Source of the DNA: Botryllus schlosseri
Lineage: Eukaryota
Length of the DNA: 64,000 nt
Direction of reading: 5' to 3'
Assembly: GCA_051294905.1 (NCBI GenBank)
Contig: CM119378.1
Location: 9,238,001 to 9,302,000, forward strand
In this document: positions 4,230 through 62,379 of the stretch, piece after piece
Layout of the letters: each line of letters opens with the position of its first letter
How positions within the stretch are numbered: the stretch's first letter is position 1
The notes under the pieces: generated by a model
Database searches by the model: none
What the model saw: only the letters and a program-made list of their open reading frames with translations
Told to the model about the DNA's origin: nothing
Position numbers and translations under genes: made by a program

Positions 4230-7200
4230 CTGTAAATTTATAAGGGACATCAGTTTTCGCAGTAGGCAAATGCAATCAGTCAGTAGGATGATTCTATAGA
4301 TTACCGTAGCCATTTCCCAAATATCAGGCAATTATTGCACAATGCACATGCACATAAAATCAAGCATATCACCACAGGTAAACGGTGAAATGCTTCTTGA
4401 GCCGCAGTGTTTCCTAACCTTTTTCTAGTACGGACCCATACAATTTTGGGGGTAGTTGCGTGGACACTTTAACCGCTAAATTTAGGAAACTGAATAATAA
4501 ATAGAAATTCATCAGTTCCGCCCAGCCGTAATCGCCGCTTCATATCGCCATCTGGTCTGGTTGTTGCCTAAAAAGCTACCTGATAAGAAATATCATCACT
4601 TTCTCTTGTCACCGGCGGTGAGCGCAAAAAGTAAAGTAAAATATGGACTCCAAAATCAGGACAGGTGTATAGTGGAGGACAATGTAGTTTCGAAGTTGTA
4701 GTTTCAGCATTAGCCTTTCATGGAACCATAAAACTATTATATGAACTCCCAAGAGGTCTGTAGACCCTGGATTAAGTATCCCTAGTTTATCGCGAAATGG
4801 GATCATCAATTGCATCTGCATTCTAACAGGTTTTCGCAAAATGAACTCAACACCGGTTTCGTTTGCGATTCTGAAAATTTATTCTGCGCGAAAATCTGAC
4901 TGAAACGATTAGTACTTTGGATGATTGTGACTGCATGGTGTTGTACCCTTCGATAGAACTCAATACGATCGGTTCCTAGGCTTTTATTAACATAAAAGTA
5001 AGCTAGTGTATCTGAATACAACATAGCAATAATACAGAGTTAACGTAGGTACAACTAACAGAAGCGACGCCACACCCAACTAGTACGAATGAAATGAATA
5101 GTCCCGACGTGAAGGTAATCAGGAGCAATCAGTATAAACACCCACTAGTGGTCAAAAGGGACTGATACACCACAATCTCCCCCACTAACAAAAGCAAAGT
5201 AATTATTTAGAGGATTGTCCATATCGTTCAGGCGCGCGTTTAATTCTAGTTGATCTTCTCAAGGGCGGAGGATCAGCGACAACTTCTTGCAGAGTTTCTG
5301 ACGAATCTTCTTTGTTGCTAACTTCAACCGTAGGTTCAACCAGAGACGAATCGTCGGCCACTGCACGGTCCGGTTCGGCAGCCCCATCATCGACAGGATA
5401 GGGCTCAGTAGTAGGCGGATAAGGTGCGAGGTCCTTGACTGAGACGGTCGATTCCACTCCAGATGGATGCCGGATCAAGGCATATTTGGAGTTAGCTTCG
5501 AGCAAATCGACTTCGATTCCGAGCGGATCACTTTTGCATCTCCTTGCGAAGTTCCTCAGCAGCACGGAGCCTCCTTGGAGTATCCAATCTGGAACTGATT
5601 CCCCCATCATACTTCTCCTACTGAAATTGAAAAATCTGTCGTGCGGACACGAATTAGTAGAAGTACACAGAAGCGAACGGATAGAGTGAAGGGCATCGGG
5701 CAACACAGCTTCCCATGAACTTTCAGGCAATTTTCGTGAGGCTAAGAGCATTTTTACTGATCTCCAAAGTGTTTGATTCAAACGCTCACATTGGGAGTTT
5801 CCAGTGGGATGATACGGAGTAGTTTTGCTCGTTGCTATGCCTTTACGGGTAAGAAACGTTGTTACTTCCTTCGATAAGAACGAGTTTGAACGATCGCTGT
5901 GAACATATTCGGGCAGACCGAACAAAGAAAACAAATCAGTGAGACAATTAACAACGGTAGCAGAAGTCATGTCTCGGCATGGATACGCAAATGGAAATCT
6001 GCTATATTCGTCAATAATTACGAGCAGATACTTTCGAGGTCCTTCAACAGGGCCTTTGAAATCAATACTTATTCTCTCCCACGGTCTTGTCGATTTGACG
6101 AGACGGTGATGGACATTGGATTTATAGAATCGCGGTTTGATTTCTGAGCATATTCTGCAGTTAGCGCAGATCTTTCTGACTTCATCTACAGAGAAAGGCA
6201 AGTTTTTCGCTCTCATAAAATGGTTCAACCGCCGTACTCCGGGATGAGCAAGAGCTTCGTGCACCTGACGAAGAGACAAGCCAGAATTTGGCAACGAGCA
6301 ACAGACACGAGAAAATGTATCCGGAACAACATTCTCAGTACCCGGGCGATGAATTATTTCATACTTGAAGGCGCTCAATTCGAGTTTCCACACCGACAAC
6401 TTGGCATTTTTGATTTTACTAGCGTGAGTTTTGCTGAATATGAACGACAACGCTTTTTGATCGGTAACGAGGCGGAACTTATTGCGGTGAAGCAAGTATC
6501 CCCATTTTCGTATGGCCTCAATAATAGCGAGGGCCTCTTTTTCAACAATATTGTATTTTGACTCGCATTTGGAAAGAGTATGCGACATAAACGATACAGG
6601 TCTGCCTCTTTGACTTAGTATGGCCGCGATAGCCACGTCCGAAGCATCACAGGCAACCTCGAAAGGTTCGTCGTCATATATACAACTTAGGCAAGCACCT
6701 ATAAGGCTATTTTTCAACGATTTGATAGCCTGGAGTTCATCGGTTTTTAACGGAAATTCATTGTTTCGAGTCAATGGTTTCACTTTCTCTGAAAACGAAG
6801 GTATCCATTTCGAATAATAGGCAAACATACCCAAGCAGCGCTTTAAACTTTTTGCATTGTTAGGGATGGGCATATCCATCAAAGGTTTCAAATGGCAAGG
6901 ATCAGGCTGAATTTTGTTATGGGAAATAAGGTACCCCAGGAGCGATAACTTTTCAACAGAGAACGCACATTTCTTTTCATTCAGAGTCAGCCCGTCAGCC
7001 TTGGCAGAGGTCATAAAACGTTCCAACCTCTTATCGTGTTCTTTTCTATTTTTGCCATAAATAGTAACATTGTCCAGGTAAGCAACAGTACCTTGCAGGT
7101 TATGATTTTGGATAAAATTGTCTATGAATCGCTGGAAAGCTGCGACGCCGTTTGTTATCCCAAAAGGCAGTCGACGAAATTGGTATAAATTACCGTCAGC

Positions 7201-10200
7201 TTCGAAAGCTGTTAGAGGACGGTCGGAAGGGCAAAGAGGTACCTGATGATACGCGGATTTCAGATCGATGGTGCTATATACCGTTCCTTTAGCGACTTCA
7301 TTAACAATATGCTCGATTCTAGGGAGCGGATACGCATCCAGGGGCGTATATCTATTAATAGTTCGAGAATAGTCGATAACTAACCGCTTTTTATGGCGTT
7401 CATCTTTCGTCACCAAAACCTGAGCACGCCACGGAGAGACGGACTTTTCTATCACATCTTCTTGCAGTAATCTTGACACCTCTTCTTTGATGAATTGGGC
7501 GTCGTCGGTGCAATAATTTCTTGATTTCACAGCGATGGGATCGACATTTCTATCAACGAATTGGAATATCTTTGGCGTCTCTGTAATCTTAGCGGCAGCG
7601 ACGGAACAGTGAGAGTCACCGATGATCAAGTCGCTTCGAGGCCCGTTGAACTTGAAAATGACGTTCTTGTGAGTTCTCAGGAACTCCAATCCTAAGATCA
7701 CATCCGCGCACAAGTTGTTTACGACTCCGAAACGTGTTTCGCTGTATTTATGATCCTGTATTGTGAATGACGAAGTAACGTGTCCCAATACTTTAGAGGT
7801 GGAGTCCTTCGATGCCAGAGTAATAGTGGATTCCGGTCCGTGCAGAGGGAGTGCAAGCGAATTAGCAAACGACCGTCTCATGAAGCATTCGTAGGCCCCC
7901 GAGTCGACCAGCGCCTCTATAGTCAATCCTGCTATATTGATAATGATAGCCGAGTATCTGAGTGATTTCGGTACTCCAATCAACAGGGAAGCGAGGTCCG
8001 CCACTTCAGCGGAATTAAACGTTACGGCACCCGTTCCACCGGCGGCTAGAGAAGCTAAATGAGAGGCTTCATCAGAATCATACGCTGGCGCAGCGATCTT
8101 CCTATTTTGAGTGCCACTTTTGCATACCTTACCGAAATGGCCTTTATATCCACATTTATAGCAATCGGCGTTTTTCGCGGGACAGACCTTGCGCAGAGGG
8201 TAATGTTGACTGCCGCAATATTGGCAATTCTTGTACGCTTTCGTGACGAGTGCAACTTCGCCGATTCCTCCCGGCGTTATTTTGACTTGATCGCTATTAG
8301 TCGTCTGTTCAGATCCCACAGCACTCACGGCGGCAGGGACGGGCATCGATATGGGCTCGTAGGAAGACGAAAATTGCTGAGCTCGCTCGAGAGATTCGGC
8401 TATCTGAACCGCTTTGTCTAATGTCATATCATCGTGCTCCAATAATCTAAGACGAATAGTAGGCGAACGTAAGCCAGCAATCAAGGCGTCACGAACTGCT
8501 TCTTTTTGATGCTCGTCGGAATTTACAGCAGCGAACATGCAATCTTTAGCGAGAGTTAGCAATTTTAGCGAAAAATCAGTGACGCTTTCTCCTTGATCCT
8601 GACGAGAGGTTGCTAAGAGGTGTCTGGAGTAGATCAAGTTATTCTTTTTCTTGTAGAGCTTGCATAGCGTCTCAAGAGCGGATTCATACGTAGCGAAGTG
8701 CTCTACAAGAGCGAACACATCCGGCGATATATATCCGTATAGAATAGCCAATTTATCAATAGTCACTTCAGCTGGAGGGTCAGAAGAGGATCGATTGGGA
8801 GCCGCTGAGTTTGAAGCGGAGGCCTGCACGGCAACTAAGAATTTCCCCAACATCTTCTCCCAATGATTGAATATCTTCTGCGAGTCAGCCGAGCTTGGCA
8901 TCACTTCCAAAACAGGCACACGTATGTACTTTTCTTGAGAGAACGCCATGTTGAGATGACCATTTATGTTAATAAAATTGTTGTACCCTTCGATAGAACT
9001 CAATACGATCGGTTCCTAGGCTTTTATTAACATAAAAGTAAGCTAGTGTATCTGAATACAACATAGCAATAATACAGAGTTAACGTAGGTACAACTAACA
9101 GAAGCGACGCCACACCCAACTAGTACGAATGAAATGAATAGTCCCGACGTGAAGGTAATCAGGAGCAATCAGTATAAACACCCACTAGTGGTCAAAAGGG
9201 ACTGATACACCACACATGGCATCAAGGTTAGGAAGACTCGAGTCGCGTTTTGATTGAATTTACTTGACTAAGGTCACTTGACTTGACTCCGACTTGAAAT
9301 GACCGGTAAGATAGATTTACGATCAATTGTAAAGTCATTGATTTTATTATATTTCGCGAAGCATTCTGAACAGCCTCATTGGTTTAGCGAGATAGCGTAG
9401 TGTGCGACCCACAGCTGCATCACCAATATGATGAGGGTTCGAGTGCGACCATGGTCGACTCCAGAATCCCATGAAGTGTTGGATGCTCAACTAGGCTCCT
9501 CCTTAGCCATCTGCTCTGCGAAAGCGGTGTCTTAAAAAGAGCGTAAGAGCTGAACCCTGCTACAAGTCGGCAGTACTGAATCAGGGAATAATATTGTCCT
9601 GGTCTAAACAACCGTTATAGACTACCACTCGGAAAAAATCACTTTTTTAGTCAATTCACCAGCAATCAGAGTTAGGTGAATAAATTTCCCCTATATATGT
9701 CCTCTTTTTCGGATCCGTAAATATTTGGGGGCTTGATTAGGGGGCGCTAAGTAGAAAAAGGTTGGTAACCCCTGGTGTAGATCGAGCTGTGTGATTTTTT
9801 CATATTTACTTGTTTGTTGGCAATGTTCCGGTTGATGAAGCAAAGTAATAAATCTCACTCATGTAGTATCCATTATCCACTTATATCAAAACCTCTGCTT
9901 CATATCGTCCTACTGGTTTTGAGATATAAGGACACCATATTTGACATGGCCTAGCGCTAGCCTATGTGCAATATGCATGTGAAATGTGCCATAAGGCACC
10001 ATATGTTTGTGACTTTACTTCATTCAGAGGTGCTCTCGAGACACCCTCAGATTGCCAAAATAGTTCGAGGCACCTTAGCACTTCGTTACCCTTGGTGCGA
10101 AATTTGGAAACATGCTGACAACTAAAAAAAGTCAGCAGCCTACGTCGCATCACTATCCAGCCCCAGATACTGATGATGATGATGACTAATAAAGGTCGTC

Positions 10201-13200
10201 AATTTCGACCAAGCCTCAAAGGGGAGCTGCGCTATAAATATGACGTGGTCTCGAATTGAAGTTGAAAGTGTGAAAAGAATTTTGGCTTTCTAAGAAATCC
10301 ACCGTATTCGAACTGCAGCTATAACTTGTTCACGAATGGTCCTATTGTACTTCGTATATCTCTGTGGCATCGATGTCACGTGAAATCGCTACTTAACCCT
10401 CTGCGTACTGCGCGCTTATTTACTGCCACTACTCCGCCGTGGTTCACAAGACACAGCTCCATCATATTATCGACTGAAAACAATATCTATCCCTGTTCGA
10501 TCGCCTCGAAAACGTGAAACATAAAGTACTGCGTGCCACAAATTTTGCAAAGGGTTAAAAGTTAATCAGACCGCATCATATTTAGAGCACAGTACCTTTT
10601 TAATATCACGGCCTCATTGCCGGTGAGGATCTTTTTTATTCACCATCTTTCGAAATGCTACTAGAAATTTGACTATATTTAATTATCGTTGTATGTCATC
10701 GGCAACCCTCTATACCTCAACTTCTCGCGGTACCTCGGTTGTGAAACACTGTTTTAGCCTATCACTATATTCATACCTTGCACCAATTTTCCCCAGATCC
10801 TCCGGCGCAAATGTATGAATCGTGTATCTCAAATGACGACCAGAACGTAGCTTTACACACCGAGTTGGAAATGATTGGCATTTCAGCTTGTCTGAGGTAG
10901 CGCTCCCGGCCTTGTTCTGTCGAGATACCACCAATGTGAATAATGTTTGAACCGGCACATATGCATACCAGCTATCAACACTTACTATTTGCTACCCTCC
11001 GCCCCCATCCGGTGGTAACGCACGGGTGGCCTTCCGCGAATGGTTCTTGATTGTCGCCTAATATGCACGCCAACTGAACAGCGGGAGTCTGTTTTGCAGG
11101 ATACCTGAATGAAATTCAAAATCAAGAATTTTAACCGCTGTGCGGACCCGAGATCTCTATCTGGCTATATCTCATATTGCGGCCGAAGAAGACTCGGCGC
11201 CCTTCGTACATCACATGGACGTCGGAGAGGAACTAAGTGTATTACGAAATTATTTGCTAGCCAGCAAGTTCGTGAGGGATGCAAACGGCTAATTCGTATT
11301 CGTTGTTAGTGCCGTAGAGTTTATGTGGCAACGTTTTTGGTTTGTATTATTCAAGTTGTATCGACCACACTATATCATTTCACATCAGGCCAATATTCTT
11401 TATTATGATTCCCTATCTGCCGACTTGTAGCATGGCCAGCTTGACACCGCTGGCGGGATAGCTTGTAGTGGTATAATCCACAACTGCATCACCAACAGAG
11501 TACTGGTTCGAGTTGGGGTGTGTCTCCGCTGTAACTAGGATAACATGTCTGGGTTATGTCCGGGTGTGCTTGAACTGCGTTGTGACTAGGATATCATACC
11601 CGTACGTGTTGCCCTTATGTAAACGCAGTCAAAATGCACCTCAGACATACTCAAGACATGATGTCTGAATGACAACGCAGTCCCAACATACACTAGACTT
11701 ACCACAGACATGATGTCCGGGTAGAAATTCAGTCCAAACACGCGTTAGACATACCCCAGACATGATGCCTGAGTAACTACACAGTCCCAACACACTCCAG
11801 ACATAGCCAGACATGATATCCCGGTGGAAACGCAGTTCAAACACAAATTACACATACCCCAGATATGATGTCCGACTGACAAAGCAGTCCGAGCACACTT
11901 CTGTTCAGACATAACCCAGACATGATGTCCAAGTTACAGCGCAATTCCAACACACCTCGGACATGGTGAATTTTACAGTAAAAACACCGTCCGATGACAC
12001 TTTCAGACATATCCCAGACATGATGTTCAACTGACATAGCAGATCGAATATACTTCAAACATATCCCAGACATGATGTCCGAGGGACAACGCAGTATGGA
12101 CACACTTCAGACATGCCGCATACATGATGTTCGAGTGATAACGTAGTCCGAACACACTCCAGACATACACCAGTAATGATGTCCGGGTATAGAGTCGGTG
12201 AAACATGTCATTGCAGAGCCGTGGGCCTATACCATAGGTTCCTTCATAGAAGTTTGACGTTGGAGTTTACTGTATGGCTATCCAGCATTGGGCCATTCCC
12301 TAGATTCCTCTAGATCAGTGGCTCTCGAACTGGGGGTGGCGGGAAAGCACCTGAGGGGGACGCGAAGCCGCCCAAGAAAAAATATGTTCCTTGAACTGAG
12401 AGAGTTTAGATTGTACTGAAGCTTTCAAGTTCAACAACGGCAATATTTTTAATTATATTACGAATTTAAATTTCATAATTGCGTCGTATCATACATACAC
12501 CGATGTTAGATTTTGACAGTCACCGGATCTTGATGCATTTATGATCGGTCTGCATGTCTGCCGAGCATCTGTGCAGAGTGCGTAGAAAGGCACAAAGTTA
12601 TGAATGAATATGATATTTGCTTATATAAGGTCATGTCATATGCCATGTATAATAGCCTATCTCTTCCGAATTTAAGATACAAGGTTGAAGGTCAAAATGG
12701 CTTACAAGCTACAGTCGCAATATTCACTCCGAGTACACTTGATTAGGGTACATTTTGTAGAATGCCACTCGTAAGAAGCACATTTTATGGCTGTTCAAAA
12801 GTACTCAATTGAATTAATCTCTCGTCGAACACCTGCGATTCATTGAGCCAAATTGTTTTCCCCGTGAAGCTAATCTCAAGTGAGTAAGAGATGGGATTAG
12901 ACACCAAAATCTCAAAAATATCTGTAAGCTAAGTGCTACCATTGCACATGATTATTTTTGACAAAATATTCAACTGATATTTTTCCCGCTCGGCGCGATT
13001 TACCTGTTTCTCTGTGTATCGTTCGAATTTTATATTTCACAACGGTCATAAAGCTTACATGCCATCAAACTAGGCGCTGGAATTGCAAACATTCTGGCTG
13101 TTGTTTCTAATGTTTTTGATATTACGATAATGGAGGACGCTAAATTTTCATTATCATCAATGGGGGGGGGGGTGTCTAAAAAAGTTTGAGAGCCACTGCT

Positions 13201-16200
13201 TTAGATGGGTTTACCACAGGACCATGCGTATGCAGTATGCACTCATTGCACTGATGAAGTATAGAATAGGACCCTATATGGGTCCCTTCATAAAAGTTTA
13301 AACCATAAGTTTACCATGCATATACAATACACGATAGTAGTTTAGGTCCTATATAGGCTATTCTAGGCTAGGGTTGCCATACGTCCGGAATTTCCCGGAC
13401 ATGCCCGGAATTTCACTGTTCAAACTAGCGTCCGGGAGGAATTTCTAAAATATGCCAAATGTCTGGAATTTTGATGTAGGTTCATAATTTTTTTCGTAAA
13501 TCAGCATAAAAACAATATAGTTTGGGAATATTTATGCTGATGTATGATATTCTTCTTCGGTATATTCCTAGAGATCGTTAAGGCCGTTTAAATGCTTTAT
13601 TCAAAGATTGTGATTCTAAACGGGGGGGAGGGGGGTCGTTTGCCTTTATTCTGGGGTTTGCGAATATGTTAAACGTAATCAGCTTCCGAAATAGCCCGTG
13701 AGTAAGTCTGGGCAAAGGTGCTGACTTTTTTTAGTAATCAGCTCGTAGAATTTTGATCTGGGCCACGGAACATTTTCAGATTGGAGTTGGAGTCGCGACC
13801 ATAAAAGGTTGGAAACCACTGGATGTGGGGTGTTTATAAAGCTCCGTGGTGCGCACCGGCATAAGGCTGATTAACAATCTTATCGGTAGGACATGAATAT
13901 GACTTAACGATGTGCAATTACCCTCCCAGTATTTTCGAACTCATCAACCTCCACCAGCACTACCGCTAACTCTGATCATGTGGGCGGGGAGTAGTATCTA
14001 TATAGTAATATATGGAACGACCAATATTAATGACAGAATTCATTCAAATAATTTAACGACCAGAGGCATGCAGAAACCAGATTCATATAGCAAGCCCCCC
14101 CCCCACACTTCAGGAGTTGCATCAATTACCCTATAGTGTGGGCTCAAAATCATTGTTTATTTGGGCGGGAGGGGGCTGAAAACATGTGCTTTCGGTTCCG
14201 GTTACACAGCACACAGCCACATACTCCTGAACCGAACCGTGACCACCTCTGGTCCACGAGCAAAGCTTTGCTGGTGTGACGTCATAACTCATTTTGAAAT
14301 CCACTAGTGGGCGCTAAAGAGTGTCCGGAATTTGGGTTGCTGAAATATGGTAACCCTATTCTAGGCCCCTCGTACAAGTTTAACACACGAGGTTACTGTA
14401 CGACCATCATGCACATATCCTACAGCAGGGTGGACAACTTTTCCAGTTGGCATGCCTGCTATGGGAAGATGAAGTACTTGGCGGGAAGGATTCCTGAATC
14501 GATCGATTAATCGCGTATTTCTCCACCTATACTAGGATTAAATCGTAGTTAATGTGATTTTAAGTTTGAAGCATAGAGACCAAAAACAGCATTTAATAAA
14601 TGTAATGTACTTCAATTGCTGTTGAAGTCACTTGGATATCTGCGGTCGATCAAAGTTGTCAACAAGCTCTTTGAACTCTGGCGGCATGTTAGACGTATAA
14701 AGCCATAGTATAAAGACTGCACGTGAACATCAGGTAAATCAGGGCTCTTCAACCGGGTGCATCGTACACCCTAGCGCAGGGGTGTCAAACATACGGCCCG
14801 CGGGCCTCATCCGGCCCGCCAGAAGATTTCATCCGGCCCGCGAAGCAATTCTGAGTAGATTGAAACATTCTTATATTTTCCAGCACATTTGTAACAAATG
14901 TTGAGACTTTTTCGCAGGAAATACTTCCATGTTCATCCCCATTATAAGAACCCAACTGCGGCACTGTGGTTCACTCTAGTTACCACTAGTAAAAAGTCGG
15001 TGAAAATGACATCCAATTTCAAGAAGTCAAAAAGTGCACACCAAGTTTAGAGTTTTATACAAATTGGACCAAAAGCAGTTATTCATTTTCGACCCAATAG
15101 ATTCCCAGACATGAGAGAAACCGGACTCGCGATTTAATAATTATAAACCCAATTCCAACGTCCACGGTTCCCATAAAATATCTTGTATTCTTCACAATGC
15201 ATATATGTAGGGCTGGCGCCAGATTACGACTAAATCAAACGGAGCATAGAATATGCCAACTTATATCGTCGTTAACCAACGCCACTGTTTTAGCGGTTCT
15301 TGACTGTATTCACCCGTATACTCATTGTATTTTTGCCAATTCCATTGTTCGCGAATAAAGGTGTTGCGACTTGCTACTTTGAAAACCCTATGATCCATGT
15401 ATTATCTATATATGTATTCAAGAGAAAAGAAAGAGCACGGGGTAACATTTTGGAATCAGTTGACTGGTCCGGGCCGCGAGCGATTTGACGGCTTGAATTC
15501 GGCCCGCGACGCAATTTGAGTTTGACATCCCTGTCCTATAGGGTGTACCAAAATTCTAAAACGATGTACCACTCAAATGGGGTGTACTGGCGTGTGCCAG
15601 ATCCGCATTAAAATGTACTAATGACTAGTTTAGCTATCACAAAAAATAGACAAGTTTATGCTCCAGAATATGTTGACGGGGTGCGCAATATCATACTATG
15701 TTCATGTCAGCAGTATACACAGCTTGTAGATTACATTCCTTTTGCGATGTCGTACGCAAATGCATCTCCTCATCATTTAAACATTGGCAATGGACTTATT
15801 GGCACCTTTTGGAGTAGAACAGGGTGGAGTTGACATCTGTTCAGCTTGCGATATCTGTCTATATAATGATTCATGAGGAAACAATACCGCGAGAGCTCTG
15901 ACATTTCGAATTGGTACTTCCTGCGAGATGCTTATAAATAGCGCCGTTTGTTTGTTTGTTTGTTTGTTTTTGAGACATTCATGGCAGACTTGTACAAACT
16001 ACTGGGTTTTCACAAAGCGCAACTAGAACTATGACTATAGAACTACTCAATTTTTAAAACTCGCAACCATAACTATAACTACAACTACCCGATTTTAAAA
16101 ATCCGCAACTAGAACTAGAACTAGAACTAGTCAATTTTCAAAATCCGCAACAACAACTAGAACTACAACTACTCAATTTTCAAAATCAGCAACTAGAACT

Positions 16201-19200
16201 AGAACTGGAACTACTCAAAAAACCGTTAGTTAGATGACCATCAACTAACTAAATCAGTAGTTTTTAGAAGTCTGCCTGAGTAGCTTTACTGTTAGTCTTA
16301 CAGATTACAACACGTATGGTATGCACACATGTGGGAGACTTTTGCTTTGTGACTCACTGGAAATTAGGGGTTACCCGAAGGCTTGTAGATTAGCGTAGGA
16401 TAAACTGGGCATTTTAAGGCCCACGGACCAAATACGGACTACGTGAGAAGTGCGGAGAAAATTTTGAAGAAAAATAAAAGCTGTCCCAAAAGACCCTACT
16501 TCTTGGTGATTAGCGAAATAATTTGGATTCACCTTCGAGCTTTATCCATTTTAAAAACTGTTGTTTCACTTTTTACAAGAAACATGATTATAAAGATGCA
16601 CATCAAATCATTCAGCTTGTCATGAAAAATGATATTATGTGCCACTTTTGGCACGCCTTCCAGGGGTAGCCGATCTCTGGCGTATTCTACATTCATAATA
16701 AAGTCCATATGACAATATAGCATGGGTATATTCAAGTTGGGATTATGACTTGAGCACGCATTCATTCGGCTGAAGCTGCGAGAAGGCTAATTCGGAAAAC
16801 CTGCCAGCGAAATTACTAAAACAACGGGACGATTTTACCAATAAGCTACACACCGCTCGGGATAGTGACCAATCTGTTACATCCCATACATTTAGGTGTC
16901 TTCTAGAAGGACGTGTCTATGGGTTGGTATGATTAAAAAGAGTTGACCCAGTTTCTTGTTTCTCGTTTTGAATAATTATGTGGAATAAATATTATATTAG
17001 TACTTTGACTCTAAATTCCTAATTGCCTAAAACGCTAAAAGTAACACCCCCCCCCTCCACAAGCTTGTGTTAACCGCGTAATTCATTTTATTCAATTTAA
17101 AAATTATTAGAAATAGATACATCGCCGAATATAATGTAAACTTTTGACTTGACTAGCCAACGTATTTCCTGCCTGTCATTCTCAGAAAATAGTTGTCCGT
17201 CTGTGACGTAGGGGTTCCCAAGTCATTGAAGGTTTAGAACCGTACAGAACTGGATTTCATTCTCCTAGCCAACACATTAATTTCTATTTTAACAGAAATA
17301 TCTGACGTTGAATCGATATTTGAAAAGAACGGGGTTTCGAGTTTGAAATGGGAGAGATTCCTACCCAAAAAAGTCACCTGCTGGCAACGCCACTGTTAGC
17401 AGTGATGGCTCTGAGCGAGCAATGCCAGCACAAACATTATTCAACAGAACACCGGCATCTCAATTCGCCCAAGACAACGACACGTGTTTTCTGGTTGTTC
17501 GGCCACTAATATTTTTTTCAAATGTGCAACTATAACTATAACTAGAACTACTGATTTTTCAAAATCTGTAACTACAACTAGAACTAAAACTACTCATTTT
17601 TCAAAACCCGCAACTAACTAGAACTAGAACTACTCAATTTTTAAAATCAGCAATTAGAACTAGAGCTACCAAAAAATCGTTAGTTAGTTGACCATCAACG
17701 AACTAAATGCTTAGTTTGTACAAGTTTGATTCATGGTGTTTTTCGACTATACTATTGTCATTTACACCAGGCCGATATTCTTCCTTTTTATTCCGTAACT
17801 GCCGATTGATAGCAGGGCCCACTTCTAGGCTTTTAGCAAGACCCCGCGTACGCGGAGGAGGTTGCGAGGAGGAGCCCGAAAAACAAATTGCCACGTAAGA
17901 TTGCTTTGCAATTTCTTGTGGTTAAGCCATAGGATTCCCAGCTCTTCTCGTCTCGTGGACCCCTTCGGAAGATATTTGAGCCAAAATTAATAATAAATAG
18001 TACGCCTTTAAGCCGTCCTGCAGCGTGATCTTCGGGTCTCCGTTACGGGCATGTTTTAAACGAATGTAATAAACTGCGTACCTCAGCTTGATAAGAGCAA
18101 TGTCGTTATGATTGTACTTTGCAACTTGAAAGTTGTTCCGCAGGAAGATTGCGTCGACTAACCTCTCCTGCTCCGTACCCTCGTCGTCAAAGAGGTCATA
18201 GTCTCCCAACACGACATCGTGTAGGTCTCCGCTGAAACCACAAAGCTATTAGGTTCTCAACCGCCGGTCCGTGGCAAATTTCCTACTGGTCCGCCAAATA
18301 TATTATAATTTAATATCTCAAATCCAAAATGCAAGAAGTTGGATGCTTTTACATTAATTATAGAAATAAAATATAAACTTGGACATTGATTCAGAAGTTT
18401 GGAACGCATGTTTTGCAAGGTGTCGCATTATAGATAGCTCTTACGTCAAAATGGTACAAGTGTTGTACGAAACTGTTTCAAAATAGCCTACAAAAGTTAT
18501 ATGTGAAAGCTACGGAGACTTGTAAAAGAACTTCGTCAAATTCCGACAGTGCAAGTAAGCGACACTTGGTAGCATAATAAAGGCTATAGCCAAGAGCAAA
18601 GCCGCATTTCTTTCAAACGATTGCGAACAATCAAAATCAAATTATTGATCTTTAACAGGGTTTCGCGAAGTTCGCCTTCCAGAAACTTCAATCCAACCAC
18701 ATATAAATATATAATATGAAAATGCAGAAGTAACTGAAGTTTCCAATATTACATTTGAGTTGCATACATATATTGTATTTATTGTACATTTTGTTTTTTG
18801 AAGGTTAACCTGTCCGCAACATATGTTTTGAAGCTTCATTGGTCAAAAAGGTGTAGACTAGCCAATGATCTAGTGAGTGTTTCTAAAAATTATTTCCGGT
18901 CAGGAGCCACTAATTGTTTTTTATGCTTCATTGCGTACCACGTGGCCCCTGGATAACTTATGTTAGTCTTGTTGTAGGCCTTATAGTATAGTAGTAACAC
19001 CATTAAATCGCATGAAAACACTATTTTATGCGGAAGATGCAATTGTTTCTTCTGTGCTAGCTTGTTTATCCGGAGCATACTGCATTACTGACTGCACAAA
19101 AGAGATCTTGTCCAGCTGACTTTGACGATTTCAGCTCTTGGACTTCATGGCCATCGAAGCCGAGATCCCTCGGGCACACTCTCATCTCAAGGCAGGGATT

Positions 19201-28200: not shown

Positions 28201-31200
28201 AGATCTGCATAGGCCTACGGCTTATCAGGGTACATAGGAGAGAGAAAAAATCTCAGGTCTGACCATTTTTACGCTGAAGGCAACATTTTTCAACGTCACA
28301 ATGAACTAGATAAGGTTTTGTATATATTATATCATAGAAAGCATCTCAACATATCGCCGCCAAAATAGAGAACACCGGTAGACTTACACGCAGAGACTTT
28401 AGGATCTATGATCGGACTCATCAACCATGCCTCATCAAATCGTTGCTTTTTCGACGACTCAAGATACAGATAAGTTCCGCTAGCATCTGTGACGTGTGGA
28501 AAATTCTATAACATTTGTAACACAAGACACGATAGAAATATACTTTTCATAGTGTGATCATGACTCGGCCCGGTATTCATTGATGGCGTTTGTCCTCTGC
28601 GTCTTGTCCAATTAAAATGATCATTTTGCGTCTCCTGCATCCATCCGCAATTGTCAGTTTCAAAATCGCAAGTGATTGTTGCTGGAAAATGAGTTAGCGA
28701 CATCAACTAACGATGAGTCACGTCGTTGATGTTTATGATTTTGTCGCCAAGCAGAATGGAGAGTTAGACGAAGTCAGTATAGCGGTAGAGAATCCAGTTA
28801 CAGAGTAATTCGATGATATGATAAATTTAATTTTACATATACTTACAGAAATATCTGAATAGAAATCCAGGTTGATGACGGTTTGGTTAAAATTTTATAG
28901 ATATTTTATAGCCGTTCGTACCTTGCATTAGTTTCATTTGTTACCCAACCACGCATTGCCCGACTCCGAACATTAGTAGCCTATATACCGAAAATGAAGA
29001 GCCGACAAGTCTCGAATTTTGAGTCAATTGCATTTTCGTGTCTGTATCTGATTCGACACCGCATATCAAGTCTCGCTGTCTCACTACAATGTTTGGTGCG
29101 TCTTCTGAATATATTAGCCTACATTTATTGTATTTCTGTTCGCAGCAGCAGGAAGTAGCAGTAGCAGAGAGTGTTACGTCATAGTTAAAATATTTGATTC
29201 AATTGGCGAAACGTTAAGACTCCGGGTCACCGCCAGCCAACCTTTTCTGACCCTCCGTCGGAAAGATTTATCTACCCGTAGTTGAATGAAAGCCGAAGTC
29301 AAAGTCGGACTTTTGAGCGTGTAACACAAAAAAAGCTCCATAAAAGTCAGAACAGTTCCTAATTGGTCAACTGGAACGAAGTAGATAGTTTTGAGGAAAA
29401 TTGTATACTCACGACATTTTCCGTCGGTTATGTTGAAGTCGTCTAAGGCGATATCTCCTTTCCAGTCGGATCCTCTTGTTGCAGTTATCACCAACGAAAA
29501 TATGTGATTGCCTTGCAAATCGATCATTCCCTCAAGCCATTGATTTCCCTTTTCGCCTTTGGTTCTCCAAATATTTACCATCTTCTTTTTAATGAGTTTG
29601 AATATTGTCAAGTCTCCGATGCCTGAAAAGCGGCAATGAGAAGTTTCGGGAGTGATGCGATGGGCAGATTTCATTTCGAATCTTGCATTTCTTGGATACC
29701 TTGAGCGGAATAACTGCAGTTCTGCCCTGACATATACACAAAACTACCTACTTTAACCACACCACGCCGTGCCGAAACCACCATTTATTTTCAGATTACG
29801 GACCGGACACTGTCGTCTCAACTCCCATCTTAGCAAAATTGGATGCTCCGATACCCCTGATTGTGCCACATGCCATGTTGAAGAAACCGCAGAGCACGTT
29901 ATTATCGAGTGTGCAAAGTACGCTAACGAAAGATGCCAGTTTAGAGCTGCCGTAATGGACCTGAGAGTACCCTTCACCATGGAAAATATAATAACTACTG
30001 ATTGTATATTACCTTTGCTGTGGGAATTCCTTGCGAAGACAAAGAGACAGTACTAAATGTTTAGTTGAATGTATTTACTTATCGCAATATCGATTCGATT
30101 ATCAACCGTTATGTCTTGACGCAAAAGACCATAGACGTCATATGCGTCACTAAAATTGCTTTTAAATATAATAATAATAACTGCAGGTGTCAGATAGCTT
30201 GAACTTACTCAGTTCAAAGTATATTGCAGCGTAAAACCCCAATATTTTTAGCAGGCCTCGTAAAATCTTGCATGAATACTTTTGCACACTTTCGTTTCAG
30301 TGCCATGAGCAGTTGTACCGTGGAGCATGGTGATTGGTATCCCTCAAGAGTGATATTTATTGACATTGTCTATGCGCTATATTTGGTGCTAAATGTTGTC
30401 CTCTACTTCGAGCGTATGCATACATTGTCCTAACATATTTCCCATCTTCATTTTCATACCGCCTTGAAATGTTCGGAAACAACAAGTATTTAATATGTAT
30501 GCAAGTCAGTAAGATGATAGACCGACTGAAGCAACATGAACTTATATTATGCAGAATATGGACGTGTAGTCGTTCACTTACCTGTTCCGTACATATGGTA
30601 CCAAAATCGAAAGCATTTCGGACCATCTATTTTGAATTGACTGCTGATCAATGTTGCACGCAAACCGATTTTTTGTCTTGAAGCATCGATATATATATAA
30701 CCGCCCCTGAATGAAACCCAGTTATATGCTTGAATTATTCGCAGCCATTGCATCGGTGGAGGCTGCAGGAGCAGTGAATCAATTTTCGCTATGCTTCATC
30801 ATTCTAGATTTATGTTGATTACCAAAGTTAAAGTTGTATGAAGTAGTTATTGACCTCATACCATGGCGAGACATGTTAGAGTAATTTCGTTACGTATAGA
30901 AAAGAAATTGGTAACTTCACGTACCTACTGCCTGACGTGTGGTCGGCTCTGGGACCAGTGCCATCTAGATGAGTCGTTGAGGATGTGGCGAGATCCCAAT
31001 CAAAGTCTTTGTTTTTTCCCTTGGCCTGCTGCCATTGACATGTGGTTGTTGTAAAATCACATGTCATCGGATGCTCATTTGTCCCTGGCCTTTCTGAAAG
31101 ATAAATGTCCATAGGCAGCTACGACAAAGAATGCTTCTGATTGTGATAAATTGAGTTGTGGTATTTCTCTCCAAATGTCATCATTATATACGTGGTAAAC

Positions 31201-34200
31201 TTCCGGACCCTATTGATTTATAAGCAATCAAGTCATCTTTGGCTCCGAGACTAAACGGTAGTTATAGGGATGGTGTGAACGTGAGGTTCACGTTCGCGTT
31301 CTGTGTGTGAACCTCGGAAATTTTGAGGTTCGTGTTCACAACAGAACCTTGGTAGGTTCTGCACTGTGAACCTTTTTCATATATTGCAATTTTCACTTCA
31401 TTATAACATCTTTGGTTCAAATTTATTGCGTTTTAACTGCCGGCCACTCTATGCATGGCATTGGCAGCATAAACAATCAACACTGAACGAGCATGCACCT
31501 TGACAATCTCAAAAATTTAGCTTGCTTTGTTACAAACGTTTGCTCGAAATATCCAGTTTTCCGTTTGTGAATATTTAGTGACTCTCTGCATGAACTTGAC
31601 CCGCATCAATCACACAACATCAAGAGCCAAATACACTACATGGAGCCAGTGAATGATGCTAATTTCTCCAATGAATGACGTTGATATCGTTTTCTATCTA
31701 GCTGGCGTATACGGGGTCAATCTTGACTTCATATGTATACCGTATCATAAAAACCAAATCCGTGCGATTGGGGTGTTGGCTACTGCTGTATAACTTGTTA
31801 ATGGGTTAGTATCGGTAGCAAGTATAGTAACCCGTTTTACACTCTGCTCGATATCAACGTAGCAATACTCAGACTCCGAATACATTTTCCGGTCTGGCCT
31901 AGACCATTAAGGCGTGAGCTCTATTCCCTGGCAAGTCCTCGTCGAAATTGTTGGCAAAGCGATGGAAGATATTGATATTATGGGATTATCTTATCAGTTG
32001 ATACATTTGGCGACGTTTAAAACGTCAATATGTACTTCAGCATTGTGGCATAGCTAGGTATCGTGTACAGTACATTAATATAGGCTATCACTTCATTGAA
32101 ATATAGGGTTGAAATTAGCAATGGGACGTCATGTGACGTCATGAGGTTCACGTTCGCGTTCACACAGAACCTTTCAAAAAGGTTCGCGTTCACACGAACC
32201 TGAACCTTTCAGAGGTTCACACCATCCCTAGTAGTTAGCACCGATTTATACTTCACCTCACGGTGAAGTTGAAAATCCAAAATAAGGTAACAGCACACGT
32301 ATTTGACTATTCATCATATTGTGCATTACAATGTACATCTGCATAATTCAGCGAAAAGTACAGTAGCCACGAAATTCTGACATATTTATCATTCTTCGTA
32401 GAATACTTGGTGATGAAATGTATTGGTATTTACAGATTTTGGGAAGTTGACTGTACATAAATTATTTTACTAGCCTGCTGATATACATATTGAAATCATA
32501 GCAATTTAAACTGTTTTGAACTTGCATGTTGACCATACTGTAGCCTATATCGCATCGCTTTACCTGCAACCATTGGTTTAGCATCCGTATGATCGGTCTT
32601 CGACTTTTCATCATCTACATATATGGTACGCATGGTGACCATGGAACACAATTGACCACATTCTATTTCTATAACGCACCGCACGGTTGGCCTTCAACTT
32701 TAATGTCGTCCAACGCTATGTCTGATTGGAAGCCTGAACCTCGAGTGGCGCGAAACGCGATTTGATAAGGCATTGATTCTGTGATCGTGACCTGGGCGAA
32801 TCTCCAGTCGGTGTCGTTTCTGCTTTGTTCCGTATCTTTCATCCATTTGCGAGTAAATCTAATTTATGTAGGCTACTGGTATGATGCGTTTCAATTTCAA
32901 TAACATTAACCAACACAGCGAGGAATACAAATGATACGGTTTTAGTAAAAATAAAGGATTTCAAACTGAACTGTGACATTAAATGCAGAATTTTGTACTT
33001 ACTTTGTACCACCACTTTGGACCGACATGACTTCCAGCATCCCCATGCTTTTCCCTTTCATATGGTAGAAAAAACTAATACAGGTTCGATTTTTTGGGTT
33101 GATTACTGGACTGAGAATCGTGCTGTATTGCGAGCTTTTTGCTGATGACGCTTCCAGGTAGATATACCAGCCGTCTAGATAAGTATAGGTGCTGATAAAC
33201 GGAGGATGCCGGCATTTTGATGACACTGTTTTAACGTACGCCCTGTTGTGTGATCAGACGAAGGGCCTGTACCCGAGCTTGGAGTTCGCTTTTGAAATAT
33301 CTCCCAATCTACATCGTCTTTAACATCTTGTTTCCATCCGCATAAATTGCCCCGTTCAAAGGCACAGTTGATGTTATCTGAAATATAGAGTTGCTCAGGC
33401 TTTCGTTCATCAATCAATATGTAGACCACTTGTTGTAAGGAACCGAATTGGGGTGTTTTTGTTTTTCTGGGAGAGGGATTCTGCGAAGACTTGAATATTA
33501 ACGTAAGTGTTCCGCGGGTTAGTAAAGGTTAAGGACCACCGTCCTACATACTTCGTACAGGTACTTCTATCCAACCCTTCCTTCGTGAAATTATGTCGCA
33601 TTTTTACTGGATTGTGCCCTTTGAAAATTTGATTCTTGGGGGCTTCAAGGGCTCTGATCAGATCGGACATCTGACATATCTACGATCATGCGACAAGGTA
33701 TATTTATCCAGAAGGTCAACTGACACATCACAAAATTCTGAGTGAGTTGACGAATATGATGTGGGAAAACAAATCAGCTTTCGTACGGAAAACAAACAAT
33801 TACCCAGGTAGGGTTGCATTTAAAACATATGGTTTTGAAGACACTATGTTTAAAACAAGTTTTAAACAGTGATATAAACAAAGGCTATTTAGAACTACAT
33901 TTTTTTAAGTTGTATAATTATGCCATAAGTGTGTAAATACTTTCCAAAAAACATTCTCTATGAGCCTACGGACGATTACCATCAGATATAGCCGGCGTAC
34001 ACGATATGGGATGGTTGGAACCCGTGAAATAGTCGGTTAAGCAGCTAGACTACGTCGATATAGATCACTGGTTCTTAATCTTTTTTCCTCCAGCGCCCCC
34101 TTTCACAGATTATCGTGCTCCAGCGCCCCCAACCTCATATTGTATAAGGCAGTGGCGGCTCGTCCTATAGGGCAACTGGGGCATTGCCCCACCTAAAATT

Positions 34201-61448: not shown

Positions 61449-61513
61449 CTGTATCAGTGACGAAATGCGTATAAGTTTGCGAAGATATGTTTGGACAGAT
61501 TTGCATAAGTTAC

Positions 61514-61647
61514 CTCATTTTGAACAATGCATCTTTGAACGTTGAAGCTACAAAATATAGAGGCTGGTAGTCAGCGTCTTGATATGGTTGAACAGAGGCC
61601 TTATCGCAGTCGAACTCTACCAGTTGCGGTCTTCCAGAGAGAGCATG
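61514..61647 (-). CDS. TH: Tyrosine hydroxylase-like gene, penultimate exon (HALSGRPQLVEFDCDKASVQPYQDADYQPLYFVASTFKDALFKMR)
   Basis: VQPYQD..YQ..YFV is the TH-type signature among biopterin-dependent hydroxylases. The exon is 134 bp, phase 0-2, like human PAH exon 11. Acceptor ttacag|CAT, donor AG|gtaact. Confidence 0.88.
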
Positions 61648-62379
61648 CTGTAACAAAGGTATGCCTCTGTAAAGATAATCACTAAAGTTGCAGTGAAAAG
61701 TTACATTTATAATTAGTTCATTTCTTTCTTCACTATTCAATCGATCATTCATACATTGTTTTATTCTGCAGGTTTGAAACCTGCATGTCAGCATTTCGCT
61801 GTCAGCTTCAGCACAGCTGTCAAATTTGGTACTTTCATATTTGACGGACGGCCTGGCGATATCGCCGAAAATTACACGTTTGCAGGTACGCAGCAAGTAT
61901 AGATACGGAAATAATCTTCCACAAAAAGCCAAACACCAAAGCTATAAACCATAACAAGTTACATACCACGTCGCAAGCGCGCTCGACCTGCAAACTTCAG
62001 AGAAGGCATTGAAGCAAAACTCAGTGTTGGCGATTTTAACAAAATCCATAGCCTGAATAGGTGACCCCGCTGTGCAATTATCAACGGTCTCGCCTGGCCG
62101 TCCGTCAAAGGGGAAATGACCGCAAATTTAAACCACAGTGAATCAATCAAGCCATCTATTTACATGTAGTTGAGGCAATGTCGTGTCGTGGCTTTGGTTT
62201 TTGAACTTCTAGCTTGCAAGCTTTGTAATTATTTGTTCGTCTATATAGTCACGATCGCCTATTTGACAGTCTTTAGTTAAATGATGGACCTTTCATGATG
62301 TTTATACGACTCTCAGGCATTTTATCGAGTGATCGTATGTTTCGACAGTGAATTGTACCACTTAATGACATGTCGTATC

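What the first reader, a model, noticed from the sequence alone, without database searches (positions are those of the whole stretch)
8963..9036. Candidate tRNA-independent self-priming / poly(A)-masking switch in a non-chromovirus animal Gypsy
Seen: where a tRNA PBS (TGG...) should abut the 5' LTR, the element RNA reads A-UUUUAUUAACAUAAA. This is the exact 15-nt complement of the LTR segment UUUAUGUUAAUAAAA (9036-9022), which contains the AAUAAA signal. The geometry puts the 3' end of the LTR segment 1 nt from the LTR boundary, the right polarity to prime minus-strand synthesis. Known: fission-yeast Tf1 self-primes by annealing its transcript 5' end to the PBS, and this has been proposed for related chromoviruses. 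This element shows no chromodomain. Inference: one duplex could supply the primer and also hide the poly(A) signal only at the 5' LTR, because the complement is absent after the 3' LTR.
Basis: partly seen in the sequence, partly recalled or inferred. Interest (0 to 1): 0.85.

Follow-up and report, generated by a model that had tools for sequence, protein, structure and literature searches.

The report
Self-priming hairpin in animal Gypsy retrotransposon
An intact 4.3-kb Gypsy-type retrotransposon has no tRNA primer site; the site is instead an exact complement of a piece of its own LTR, a pairing kept by matched changes across a large animal-wide family, so these elements most likely prime their own reverse transcription as fission-yeast Tf1 does.

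Summary
On the minus strand, 8977-8963 starts 2 nt after the 5' LTR end. It is the exact 15-nt reverse complement of LTR bases 9036-9022, which carry AATAAA.

The host element (4939-9214) is an intact Ty3/Gypsy: identical 236-bp LTRs, CCATG target duplication, polypurine tract, one 1248-aa Gag-PR-RT-RH-IN ORF and no chromodomain.

I fetched 93 related loci from metagenomes, an aphid and a whipworm.
- 48 loci show the same layout, with 32 different arm sequences, each matching its own LTR.
- RNAalifold finds the helix on a plain alignment. 12 of 13 pairs show compensatory change, 97% of cells are paired, and 0 of 500 shuffles reach this.
- G·U pairs are almost absent. That fits a primer site recopied from the primer rather than a merely selected hairpin.

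Tf1-type self-priming is therefore well supported (about 0.8). The mechanism is known; the lineage is new: non-chromoviral, Mag/Steamer-like, and described in papers as tRNA-primed.

The poly(A)-masking half is not supported as a general feature. A canonical hexamer lies inside the arm in only 17 of 32 distinct elements. The transcription start site is unresolved. TGGTCATCTCAAC is not conserved.

The parts
4939..9214 (-). Complete LTR retrotransposon (4276 bp), Ty3/Gypsy type, no breaks found
   Evidence: Two 236-nt direct repeats, 100% identical, 4040 nt apart. One uninterrupted ORF. Domain order PR-RT-RH-IN.
9215..9219 (-). Target-site duplication CCATG, upstream copy
   Evidence: Read directly. 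Same 5 nt as at 4934-4938.
4934..4938 (-). Target-site duplication CCATG, downstream copy
8979..9214 (-). 5' LTR (TGTGG...ACAACA)
4939..5174 (-). 3' LTR, identical to the 5' LTR
9022..9036 (-). LTR arm of the duplex and candidate self-primer (TTTATGTTAATAAAA). Its 3' end at 9022 would carry the priming 3'-OH after cleavage.
   Evidence: Homologous arms in 48 related loci.
9023..9028 (-). AATAAA poly(A) hexamer inside the LTR arm (the 3' LTR copy is at 4983-4988)
   Evidence: A canonical hexamer lies inside the arm in 17 of 32 distinct relatives.
8978..8978 (-). Single unpaired A between the LTR end and the primer-binding arm
   Evidence: The arm starts 2 nt after the LTR end in most loci with a defined LTR end.
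8963..8977 (-). Primer-binding site: exact reverse complement of 9036-9022
   Evidence: Covariation.
8950..8962 (-). Not conserved; most likely just the leader before the ATG.
   Evidence: In L001 the arm runs straight into the ATG. L002 has GGAAA there.
5206..8949 (-). Gag-Pol ORF, 1248 aa, uninterrupted (0 stops, 0 frameshifts)
8122..8226 (-). Two Cys/His zinc knuckles of the nucleocapsid part of Gag (aa 242-276)
   Evidence: Invariant C242 C245 C256 C263 C266 H271 C276 in alignment A1.
7675..7941 (-). Aspartic protease (aa 337-425)
   Evidence: PF13975, PF13650.
6931..7413 (-). Reverse transcriptase (aa 513-673)
   Evidence: PF00078, E = 2.4e-27.
6367..6744 (-). RNase H (aa 736-861)
   Evidence: PF17917, PF17919.
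5806..6090 (-). Integrase core (aa 954-1048). The 200 aa after it have no chromodomain.
   Evidence: PF00665. C-terminal 215 aa scanned at E up to 10: no chromo hit.
5176..5186 (-). Polypurine tract (AGTGGGGGAGA), one base before the 3' LTR
   Evidence: Similar purine-rich tracts precede the LTR start in relatives.

Best explanation
The element initiates minus-strand DNA synthesis with a piece of its own RNA, as Tf1 of fission yeast does, not with a host tRNA.

Proposed steps:
1. In the genomic RNA, the LTR-derived segment 9036-9022 folds back over a 44-nt loop. It pairs with 8977-8963, which sits one base after the LTR end, where a primer-binding site must be.
2. The element's RNase H cuts at the 3' end of the LTR arm, after 9022, at a junction conserved in the family as ...TAAA followed by GCC or ACC.
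3. Reverse transcriptase extends that 3'-OH through the spacer A and the last 43 nt of the LTR. This gives a very short strong-stop DNA, which transfers to the matching stretch between the hexamer and the poly(A) site of the 3' LTR.
4. Plus-strand synthesis later copies the RNA primer, so the primer-binding site is rewritten from the LTR arm in each cycle.

Shown here: the anatomy, the position, the absence of a TGG site, and the family-wide strictly Watson-Crick covariation. Inferred by analogy with Tf1: the cleavage, the extension, the strand transfers, and the presence of the LTR arm at the RNA 5' end.
For: 1. Exact 15-nt complement at the canonical primer-site position in an element that looks recently inserted: identical LTRs, target duplication, intact ORF.

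2. The same layout occurs in 43 of 51 related loci with enough contiguous upstream DNA. Arms are 10-19 nt and loops 24-69 nt, and at most 1 of 100 shuffles matches each. It occurs in 5 more loci where the two arms lie at opposite ends of collapsed contigs. It also occurs in named animals: the aphid Macrosiphum euphorbiae (16 nt) and the whipworm Trichuris suis (16 nt with 1 mismatch).

3. Wherever both LTRs and the 3' flank fix the LTR end, the arm starts 1-5 nt after it, mostly 2 nt. In those loci 0 of 200 shuffles match, except the two shortest or decayed cases (L066 1 of 200; Trichuris L093, scored on its 9-nt exact stretch, 6 of 200).

4. There are 32 different arm sequences, each complementary to its own LTR.

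5. RNAalifold on a plain MAFFT alignment predicts exactly this helix, with 12 of 13 pairs showing compensatory change. 97% of cells are paired, against 28-47% when the register is slid. There are 95 double-change cells against 21 in shuffles (0 of 500).

6. Only 4 of 364 cells are G·U. Two near-identical copies from one assembly differ by a matched change: L014 CAAGTTGATTAAA with TTTAATCAACTTG, against L013 CAAGTTTATTAAA with TTTAATAAACTTG. Both facts are what templated recopying of the site from the primer predicts.

7. No locus has TGG at the primer-site position.

8. The mechanism is established for Tf1/Tf2/Tj1 and predicted for other lineages (PMC4600332, PMC5341516, PMC6317226).
Against: - No transcript 5' ends are available. 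It is therefore not shown that the 5' LTR copy of the arm is in the RNA, or that it sits at the RNA 5' end as in Tf1.
- No TATA box lies about 30 nt upstream of the arm, and initiator-like motifs are not enriched there.
- No cDNA intermediate or cleavage product has been seen.
- A second helix like the U5-IR stem that Tf1 needs is not evident in the window element, and is only suggestive in about 13 of 32 relatives.
- Published descriptions of Mag-lineage and Steamer-like elements assign tRNA primer sites (PMC3286476, PMC11046912). Those are other elements, and the assignments rest on similarity only.
Confidence: 0.8

Rival explanations
1. The duplex is a regulatory or packaging RNA hairpin only. 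It might hide the 5' poly(A) signal, occlude the nearby start codon, or act as a packaging or dimerisation signal. Reverse transcription would then be primed by something else.
For: AATAAA lies inside the helix in the window. A canonical hexamer lies inside the arm in 17 of 32 distinct relatives. In many relatives the downstream arm abuts or overlaps the ATG (distances of -13 to +21 nt), so the helix could affect translation.
Against: - No other primer site exists. Nothing tRNA-like follows the LTR in any locus.
- The helix is anchored to the LTR end (mostly 2 nt after it), not to the hexamer or the ATG. Both of those vary in position relative to it.
- In 15 of 32 elements the canonical hexamer is not in the arm.
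- A helix kept only by selection on RNA should tolerate G·U pairs. Here there are 4 in 364 cells.
- These roles could still exist in addition to priming.
Confidence: 0.08
2. A host tRNA, tRNA half or tRNA fragment primes. It would bind either at TGGTCATCTCAAC (8962-8950) or at the AT-rich arm itself.
For: TGG at 8962 resembles the start of a classical primer site. Related lineages are annotated with tRNA-Leu, -Ser or -Asn sites (PMC3286476, PMC11046912).
Against: - The TGG stretch begins 17 nt after the LTR and is absent in the two closest relatives with DNA in hand.
- The arms differ between elements, even within one assembly. The WLWD contigs carry at least three different arms, each matching its own LTR. 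A fixed host RNA cannot explain that.
- Arms begin with TTTA or TTTT, not TGG.
- No tRNA genes were available to test directly.
Confidence: 0.03
3. Self-priming, but from a different copy of the arm. Transcription would start just 3' of the arm, at the conserved GCC/ACC junction, so the arm and its hexamer lie in U3 and are present only near the RNA 3' end. The primer would then come from the 3' LTR copy, in cis by circularisation or in trans from the co-packaged RNA.
For: The junction ...TAAA then GCC/ACC is the most conserved feature of the LTR (22 of 32 distinct elements). No promoter motif places the start site upstream of the arm. A hexamer in U3 would remove any need to silence a 5' poly(A) signal. 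The strong-stop DNA would be the same as in the main model.
Against: - It needs cleavage that removes the terminal repeat and poly(A) tail from the priming RNA, and a second RNA for strand transfer. No precedent is known to me.
- The Tf1 precedent places the primer at the RNA 5' end (PMC4600332).
Confidence: 0.1

Closest known systems
Tf1, Tf2 (Schizosaccharomyces pombe) and Tj1 (S. japonicus): self-primed Ty3/Gypsy elements
   Same: No tRNA primer site. The sequence just after the 5' LTR is complementary to an LTR-derived segment of the element's own RNA. Single or fused Gag-Pol. The priming geometry matches (PMC4600332, PMC5341516).
   Different: Those are chromodomain-bearing fungal elements, and their primer is the first bases of the mRNA, shown by experiment. 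Here there is no chromodomain and the host is an animal. The arm is 10-19 nt and usually ends in a poly(A)-type hexamer. The start site and the cleavage are not known.
Tf1/sushi-group vertebrate chromoviruses; plant Tcn1 chromoviruses; Ty1/copia TAR lineage (Houba, Osr-1)
   Same: Self-priming predicted from LTR-to-primer-site complementarity alone, as here (PMC6317226).
   Different: Different lineages: chromoviruses or copia. In the papers I could search, no non-chromoviral metazoan Gypsy lineage is described this way.
Mag lineage of Ty3/Gypsy (Mag, SURL/C-clade, Jule, Steamer-like elements)
   Same: About 4-5 kb. Single Gag-Pol ORF. LTRs of 140-300 bp. 5-bp target duplication. A clear AATAAA in the LTR without a conserved TATA box. 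LTR ends in ...AACA. Two zinc knuckles in Gag. Spread across animal phyla (PMC3286476 Table 1; PMC3601003; PMC11046912; PMC6238403).
   Different: Published members are annotated with tRNA-Leu, -Ser, -Arg or -Asn primer sites. This family has none. Membership is inferred from architecture only, because no reference sequence could be fetched for a tree.
Poly(A) hairpin of HIV-1 and promoter-proximal occlusion of 5' poly(A) signals in retroviruses (from my own knowledge)
   Same: A poly(A) hexamer in the terminal repeat sits inside a stable RNA helix.
   Different: In this element the partner strand lies outside the LTR, so the helix can form only at the 5' end. Nothing here shows that it affects polyadenylation, and about half of the family lacks the canonical hexamer in the helix.

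Membership tests
Self-primed LTR retrotransposons (Tf1-type priming) | No tRNA-complementary primer site (TGG...) next to the 5' LTR | tested here: met
   The window reads CA-A-TTTTATT.... No locus with a defined LTR end has TGG there.
Self-primed LTR retrotransposons (Tf1-type priming) | The sequence immediately 3' of the 5' LTR is complementary to a segment of the LTR or 5' RNA | tested here: met
   15 of 15 nt in the window. 48 related loci, with at most 1 of 100 shuffles.
Self-primed LTR retrotransposons (Tf1-type priming) | Complementarity maintained in relatives by compensatory change | tested here: met
   12 of 13 pairs compensatory; 97% paired; 0 of 500 shuffles.
Self-primed LTR retrotransposons (Tf1-type priming) | The complementary segment is the very 5' end of the mRNA | not testable with these tools
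   No transcript data. Promoter motifs are uninformative.
Self-primed LTR retrotransposons (Tf1-type priming) | RNase H cleaves the RNA duplex to free the primer, and the cDNA is joined to the self-primer | not testable with these tools
   Needs sequencing of native RNA and cDNA ends.
Self-primed LTR retrotransposons (Tf1-type priming) | An additional U5-IR-like stem next to the primer duplex | tested here: inconclusive
   A small RCCU...AGGY hairpin lies directly 3' of the arm in about 13 of 32 relatives, but not in the window. Stem lengths are no longer than in shuffles.
Tf1/sushi chromoviruses (phylogenetic group) | Chromodomain at the integrase C-terminus | tested here: not met
   No PF00385 in the polyprotein. 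None in the last 215 aa at E up to 10. None in the precomputed Pfam lists of the close family, whereas the distant hits P0018 and P0020 have it.
Tf1/sushi chromoviruses (phylogenetic group) | Clusters with Tf1/sushi in an RT-RH-IN tree | not tested
   No reference sequences of named clades could be fetched.
Ty3/Gypsy (Metaviridae) LTR retrotransposon | PR-RT-RH-IN order, TG...CA LTRs, short target duplication, polypurine tract | tested here: met
Mag lineage of Ty3/Gypsy | Small size, single Gag-Pol ORF, short AATAAA-bearing LTR without a TATA box, ...AACA LTR end, 5-bp duplication | tested here: met
   compared with PMC3286476 Table 1 and PMC3601003 Table 3. This is resemblance, not phylogeny.
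Mag lineage of Ty3/Gypsy | Clusters with Mag/SURL references in an RT tree | not tested
   No reference sequences available.
Mag lineage of Ty3/Gypsy | tRNA-Leu or tRNA-Ser primer site, as reported for mosquito members | tested here: not met
   No TGG-type site.
5' poly(A)-signal occlusion by RNA structure | The hexamer is sequestered in a stable helix at the 5' end only | tested here: met
   True for the window. Family-wide, a canonical hexamer is inside the arm in only 17 of 32.
5' poly(A)-signal occlusion by RNA structure | The helix reduces cleavage and polyadenylation at the 5' copy | not testable with these tools
   Needs native 3'-end maps.

The most novel reading that the evidence does not exclude
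One duplex does three jobs in a pan-metazoan, non-chromoviral Gypsy lineage. It supplies the reverse-transcription primer. It hides the terminal-repeat poly(A) hexamer at the 5' end only. It occludes the adjacent start codon. Folding would then toggle each RNA between the messenger and genome fates. Because no tRNA is used, the lineage would also be invisible to host silencing that targets tRNA primer sites, and to annotation tools that look for them.
Probability: 0.2. Interest if true: 0.75.

Novelty: new member of a known kind. Interest (0 to 1): 0.6.

Why it matters
Self-priming has been treated as a peculiarity of Tf1/sushi chromoviruses and a few plant lineages. Here the same signature is close to universal in a very large family of about 1200-aa single-ORF Gypsy elements. 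Named protein hits come from nematodes, insects, a tunicate and a mussel, and DNA-level confirmation comes from an aphid and a whipworm.

If it holds, four things follow:
- Primer choice has switched between tRNA and self more than once in Ty3/Gypsy evolution.
- tRNA primer sites assigned by similarity to Mag-like and Steamer-like elements deserve re-examination.
- LTR annotation pipelines that require a tRNA site will misjudge these elements.
- Such elements would not be targets of defences aimed at tRNA primer sites.

The near-absence of G·U pairs is a useful sequence-only criterion. It separates a recopied primer site from an ordinary conserved RNA hairpin.

Tried and rejected
- **tRNA genes.** None were found in the window or in 47 related loci, so no direct tRNA complementarity test was possible.
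- **Rfam.** The whole window gave nothing at gathering threshold.
- **Start site from motifs.** TATA-like motifs are not positioned about 30 nt from the arm. An initiator-like TCAG[AT] is not enriched near it: 5 hits near against 9 in a control window. Four of the five do lie 15-17 nt upstream of the arm, including 9055-9050 in the window.
- **Transcript-like contigs.** The roughly 4-kb contigs are collapsed or circularly permuted DNA assemblies, not transcripts. They give no RNA ends.
- **Clade placement.** No tool fetches named reference elements such as Mag, SURL, Cigr-1, Steamer or Tf1. 'Mag-like' therefore rests on architecture and on motif tables in papers.
- **DNA not obtainable.** P0002 and P0011 (Palaemon carinicauda) could not be fetched.
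- **Papers not held.** The original Tf1 papers and the Mag sequence note are not in the library. The mechanism is cited from later open papers.
- **Apparent read-through in L018 and L042.** LTR alignments seemed to run over the primer site. This was a chance extension of the alignment, not a tandem array.
- **Loci without the pair.**
  - L007 has no LTRs.
  - L036 and L045 have no LTR pair.
  - In L016 the arm is cut by the contig end.
  - L052 keeps the primer-site motif but has lost the LTR arm.
  - These loci are decayed or incomplete, not counter-examples.
- **Consensus line.** An alignment tool printed one by itself.
Full report
**1. What is at the coordinates**

Read on the minus strand, the window holds a complete LTR retrotransposon at 4939-9214.
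- Its two 236-bp LTRs are 100% identical and lie 4040 nt apart.
- The LTRs begin TGTGG and end ACAACA. They are flanked by a 5-bp duplication, CCATG, at 9219-9215 and 4938-4934.
- A purine-rich tract, AGTGGGGGAGA, sits one base before the 3' LTR.
- One uninterrupted ORF runs from the ATG at 8949 to 5206 (1248 aa).
- Pfam places protease, reverse transcriptase, RNase H and integrase in that order, which is the Ty3/Gypsy order. No chromodomain appears in the whole protein, or in the last 215 residues even at E up to 10.
- I found no stops or frameshifts in the ORF.
- The host is an animal. Elsewhere the window carries a MAM-domain exon and an aromatic amino-acid hydroxylase exon.

**2. The observation**

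The LTR ends at 8979. One A follows at 8978. Then 8977-8963 reads TTTTATTAACATAAA, the exact reverse complement of LTR bases 9036-9022, TTTATGTTAATAAAA. AATAAA lies at 9028-9023.
- 0 of 200 shuffles of the post-LTR 45 nt reach this length.
- 0 of 100 shuffles of the upstream region reach it.
- The fold of 9040-8955 adopts the helix (-19.4 kcal/mol, z = -3.4).
- There is no TGG at the primer-site position.
- The TGG at 8962 lies 17 nt from the LTR.

**3. Relatives**

A protein search found a family of about 1200-aa single-ORF polyproteins on contigs of about 4 kb. A second search, restricted to the RT-IN part, scored 8000 candidates. It found 1463 proteins at E up to 1e-20. Named hits come from Trichuris, Trichinella, Ciona, Mytilus, aphids, Lepidoptera and a cockroach, at 53-58% identity. 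I fetched DNA for 13 loci by exact protein look-up and 80 loci from a metagenome scan.

The two closest relatives with DNA in hand already show the point:

| Locus | Protein identity to window | LTR arm | Arm after the LTR |
|---|---|---|---|
| L001 | 63% | TTTAGTGAATAAAA | TTTTATTCACTAAA, running straight into the ATG |
| L002 | 54% | CAGTAAATAAAA | TTTTATTTACTG |

The sequences differ but the geometry is the same.

Across the whole set:
- 43 of 51 loci with enough contiguous upstream DNA have a perfect pair of 10-19 nt with a loop of 24-69 nt. At most 1 of 100 shuffles matches each.
- 5 more loci have the two arms at opposite ends of collapsed contigs.
- Wherever two LTRs plus the 3' flank define the true LTR end, the arm begins 1-5 nt after it, mostly 2 nt.
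- In a named aphid genome the pair is 16 nt, in an element with identical LTRs and a GGTAC duplication. In Trichuris suis it is 16 nt with one mismatch, in an older copy.
- The few loci without the pair are decayed or incomplete.

**4. Covariation**

There are 32 distinct arm sequences.
- RNAalifold, run on a plain MAFFT alignment of 28 contiguous LTR-to-leader stretches, predicts exactly this 13-bp helix. 12 pairs show compensatory change.
- Counting pairs gives 97% standard pairs, against 28-47% when the register is slid by 1-3 columns.
- There are 95 double-change cells against 21 in shuffles.
- The covariation score is 0.77 against 0.16. No shuffle in 500 reaches any of the measures.
- In a position-anchored table, positions 5-10 and 12-15 of the helix each show all four Watson-Crick pair types.

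Two details favour a templated origin over plain selection on an RNA fold.
- G·U pairs are almost absent: 4 of 364 cells.
- Near-identical copies from one assembly differ by a matched double change: L014 CAAGTTGATTAAA with TTTAATCAACTTG, against L013 CAAGTTTATTAAA with TTTAATAAACTTG.

In self-primed replication the plus strand copies the RNA primer. That rewrites the primer-binding site from the LTR arm, which predicts both details. This step is inference.

**5. Mechanism**

The best reading is Tf1-type self-priming.
1. The LTR-derived segment folds back on the site next to the LTR.
2. The duplex is cut at the 3' end of the LTR arm.
3. That end is extended through the spacer and the last 43 nt of the LTR.
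4. The short strong-stop DNA transfers to the 3' LTR.

The mechanism itself is established for Tf1/Tf2 and proposed for Tj1, the sushi group, plant Tcn1 and copia TAR (PMC4600332, PMC5341516, PMC6317226). The anatomy and covariation are shown here. The cleavage, the extension and the presence of the arm at the RNA 5' end are inferred.

**6. What is not supported**

*Poly(A) masking.* It cannot be the conserved reason for the helix.
- A canonical AATAAA or ATTAAA lies inside the arm in 17 of 32 distinct elements.
- In others the arm ends in a one-base variant such as GTTAAA, TTTAAA, GATAAA or CATAAA.
- In others a canonical hexamer lies 0-28 nt further 3' (L008, L021, L027, L062).
- In some no hexamer is present at all (L031, L050).
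- What is conserved is the arm's 3' end...TAAA, in about three quarters of elements. It is followed by GCC or ACC in 22 of 32.
- Masking may still occur in the window element, but nothing here tests it.

*Start site.* It is unknown. There is no TATA box at the right distance and no enrichment of initiator-like motifs. A variant in which transcription starts just 3' of the arm therefore remains open. The arm would then lie in U3 and act from the RNA 3' end or in trans.

*tRNA primer.* This is very unlikely.
- The arms differ between elements within one genome, and each matches its own LTR.
- None starts with TGG.
- The window's TGG stretch is not conserved.

**7. Comparison with what is known**

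By function this resembles Tf1. By descent it is not a chromovirus: the chromodomain test is not met.

By architecture it resembles the Mag lineage, including SURL-like and Steamer-like elements:
- small size and a single ORF;
- short LTRs that carry AATAAA and lack a TATA box;
- an ...AACA LTR end;
- a 5-bp duplication;
- two zinc knuckles in Gag (PMC3286476, PMC3601003, PMC11046912, PMC6238403).

I could not build a tree with reference elements, so this placement is an inference.

Papers that describe Mag-lineage elements assign tRNA-Leu, -Ser, -Arg or -Asn primer sites by similarity (PMC3286476, PMC11046912). Nine full-text searches found no description of self-priming in this lineage or in any non-chromoviral animal Gypsy. 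Older subscription papers are not held, so prior mention cannot be excluded.

**8. Verdict**

- The self-priming interpretation is strongly supported by comparative evidence.
- The poly(A)-switch part is speculative and not general.
- The mechanism is known, so this is a new member of a known kind, in a new and very widespread lineage.
- Interest 0.6.

Noticed in passing
window 29177-29674 (-) and 61513-61932 (-): ORF pieces matching a MAM domain (E = 8.6e-10) and a biopterin-dependent aromatic amino-acid hydroxylase (E = 5.3e-10). These are probably exons of host genes and show that the host is a metazoan.
   Followed up: partly
L009, L015, L017, L019, L021, L022, L027, L029, L030, L050, L059, L066, L092 (just 3' of the LTR arm): The conserved GCCU/ACCU right after the primer arm pairs with an AGGY a few bases on. 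This forms a small hairpin stacked on the main helix and is reminiscent of the U5-IR stem that Tf1 needs. It is not seen in the window element, and stem lengths are no longer than in shuffles.
   Followed up: partly
L012-L014, L019, L020, L022, L028, L030, L039, L041 and others: In many relatives the primer-binding arm abuts or overlaps the polyprotein start codon (distance -13 to 0 nt). Folding of the primer duplex would then cover the ATG. In the window the gap is 13 nt.
   Followed up: no
window 9050-9055 (-): An initiator-like TCAGAT lies 17 nt upstream of the LTR arm. The same motif sits 15-16 nt upstream in L060, L063 and L066. It is not enriched family-wide.
   Followed up: partly
window 16038-16205 and 17501-17666: Two arrays of 42-nt tandem repeats of one family, about 1.4 kb apart.
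   Followed up: no
window 11589-12219: A repeat family of four 165-nt copies, with start-to-start spacings of 52 and 362 nt.
   Followed up: no
window 34150-35209 and 54109-54963: Inverted repeats, up to 350 nt at 94% complementarity, about 20 kb apart, together with 200-nt direct repeats at 34578-35138. Probably two copies of a repeat in opposite orientation.
   Followed up: no
window 50875-51053 and 53644-53822: A 179-nt direct repeat, 87% identical, 2.8 kb apart. Possibly the LTRs of an older, small element.
   Followed up: no
L007 (ENA contig ctg187716): A full-length family ORF (P0009, 1207 aa) with no detectable LTRs. It sits beside 201-nt tandem repeats and ZSWIM-like ORFs. It may be a decayed or co-opted copy.
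   Followed up: no
L093:3109-6366 (Trichuris suis): The Trichuris copy carries an internal tandem duplication of about 1.5 kb (98.5% identical). This explains its annotated 1551-aa product.
   Followed up: no
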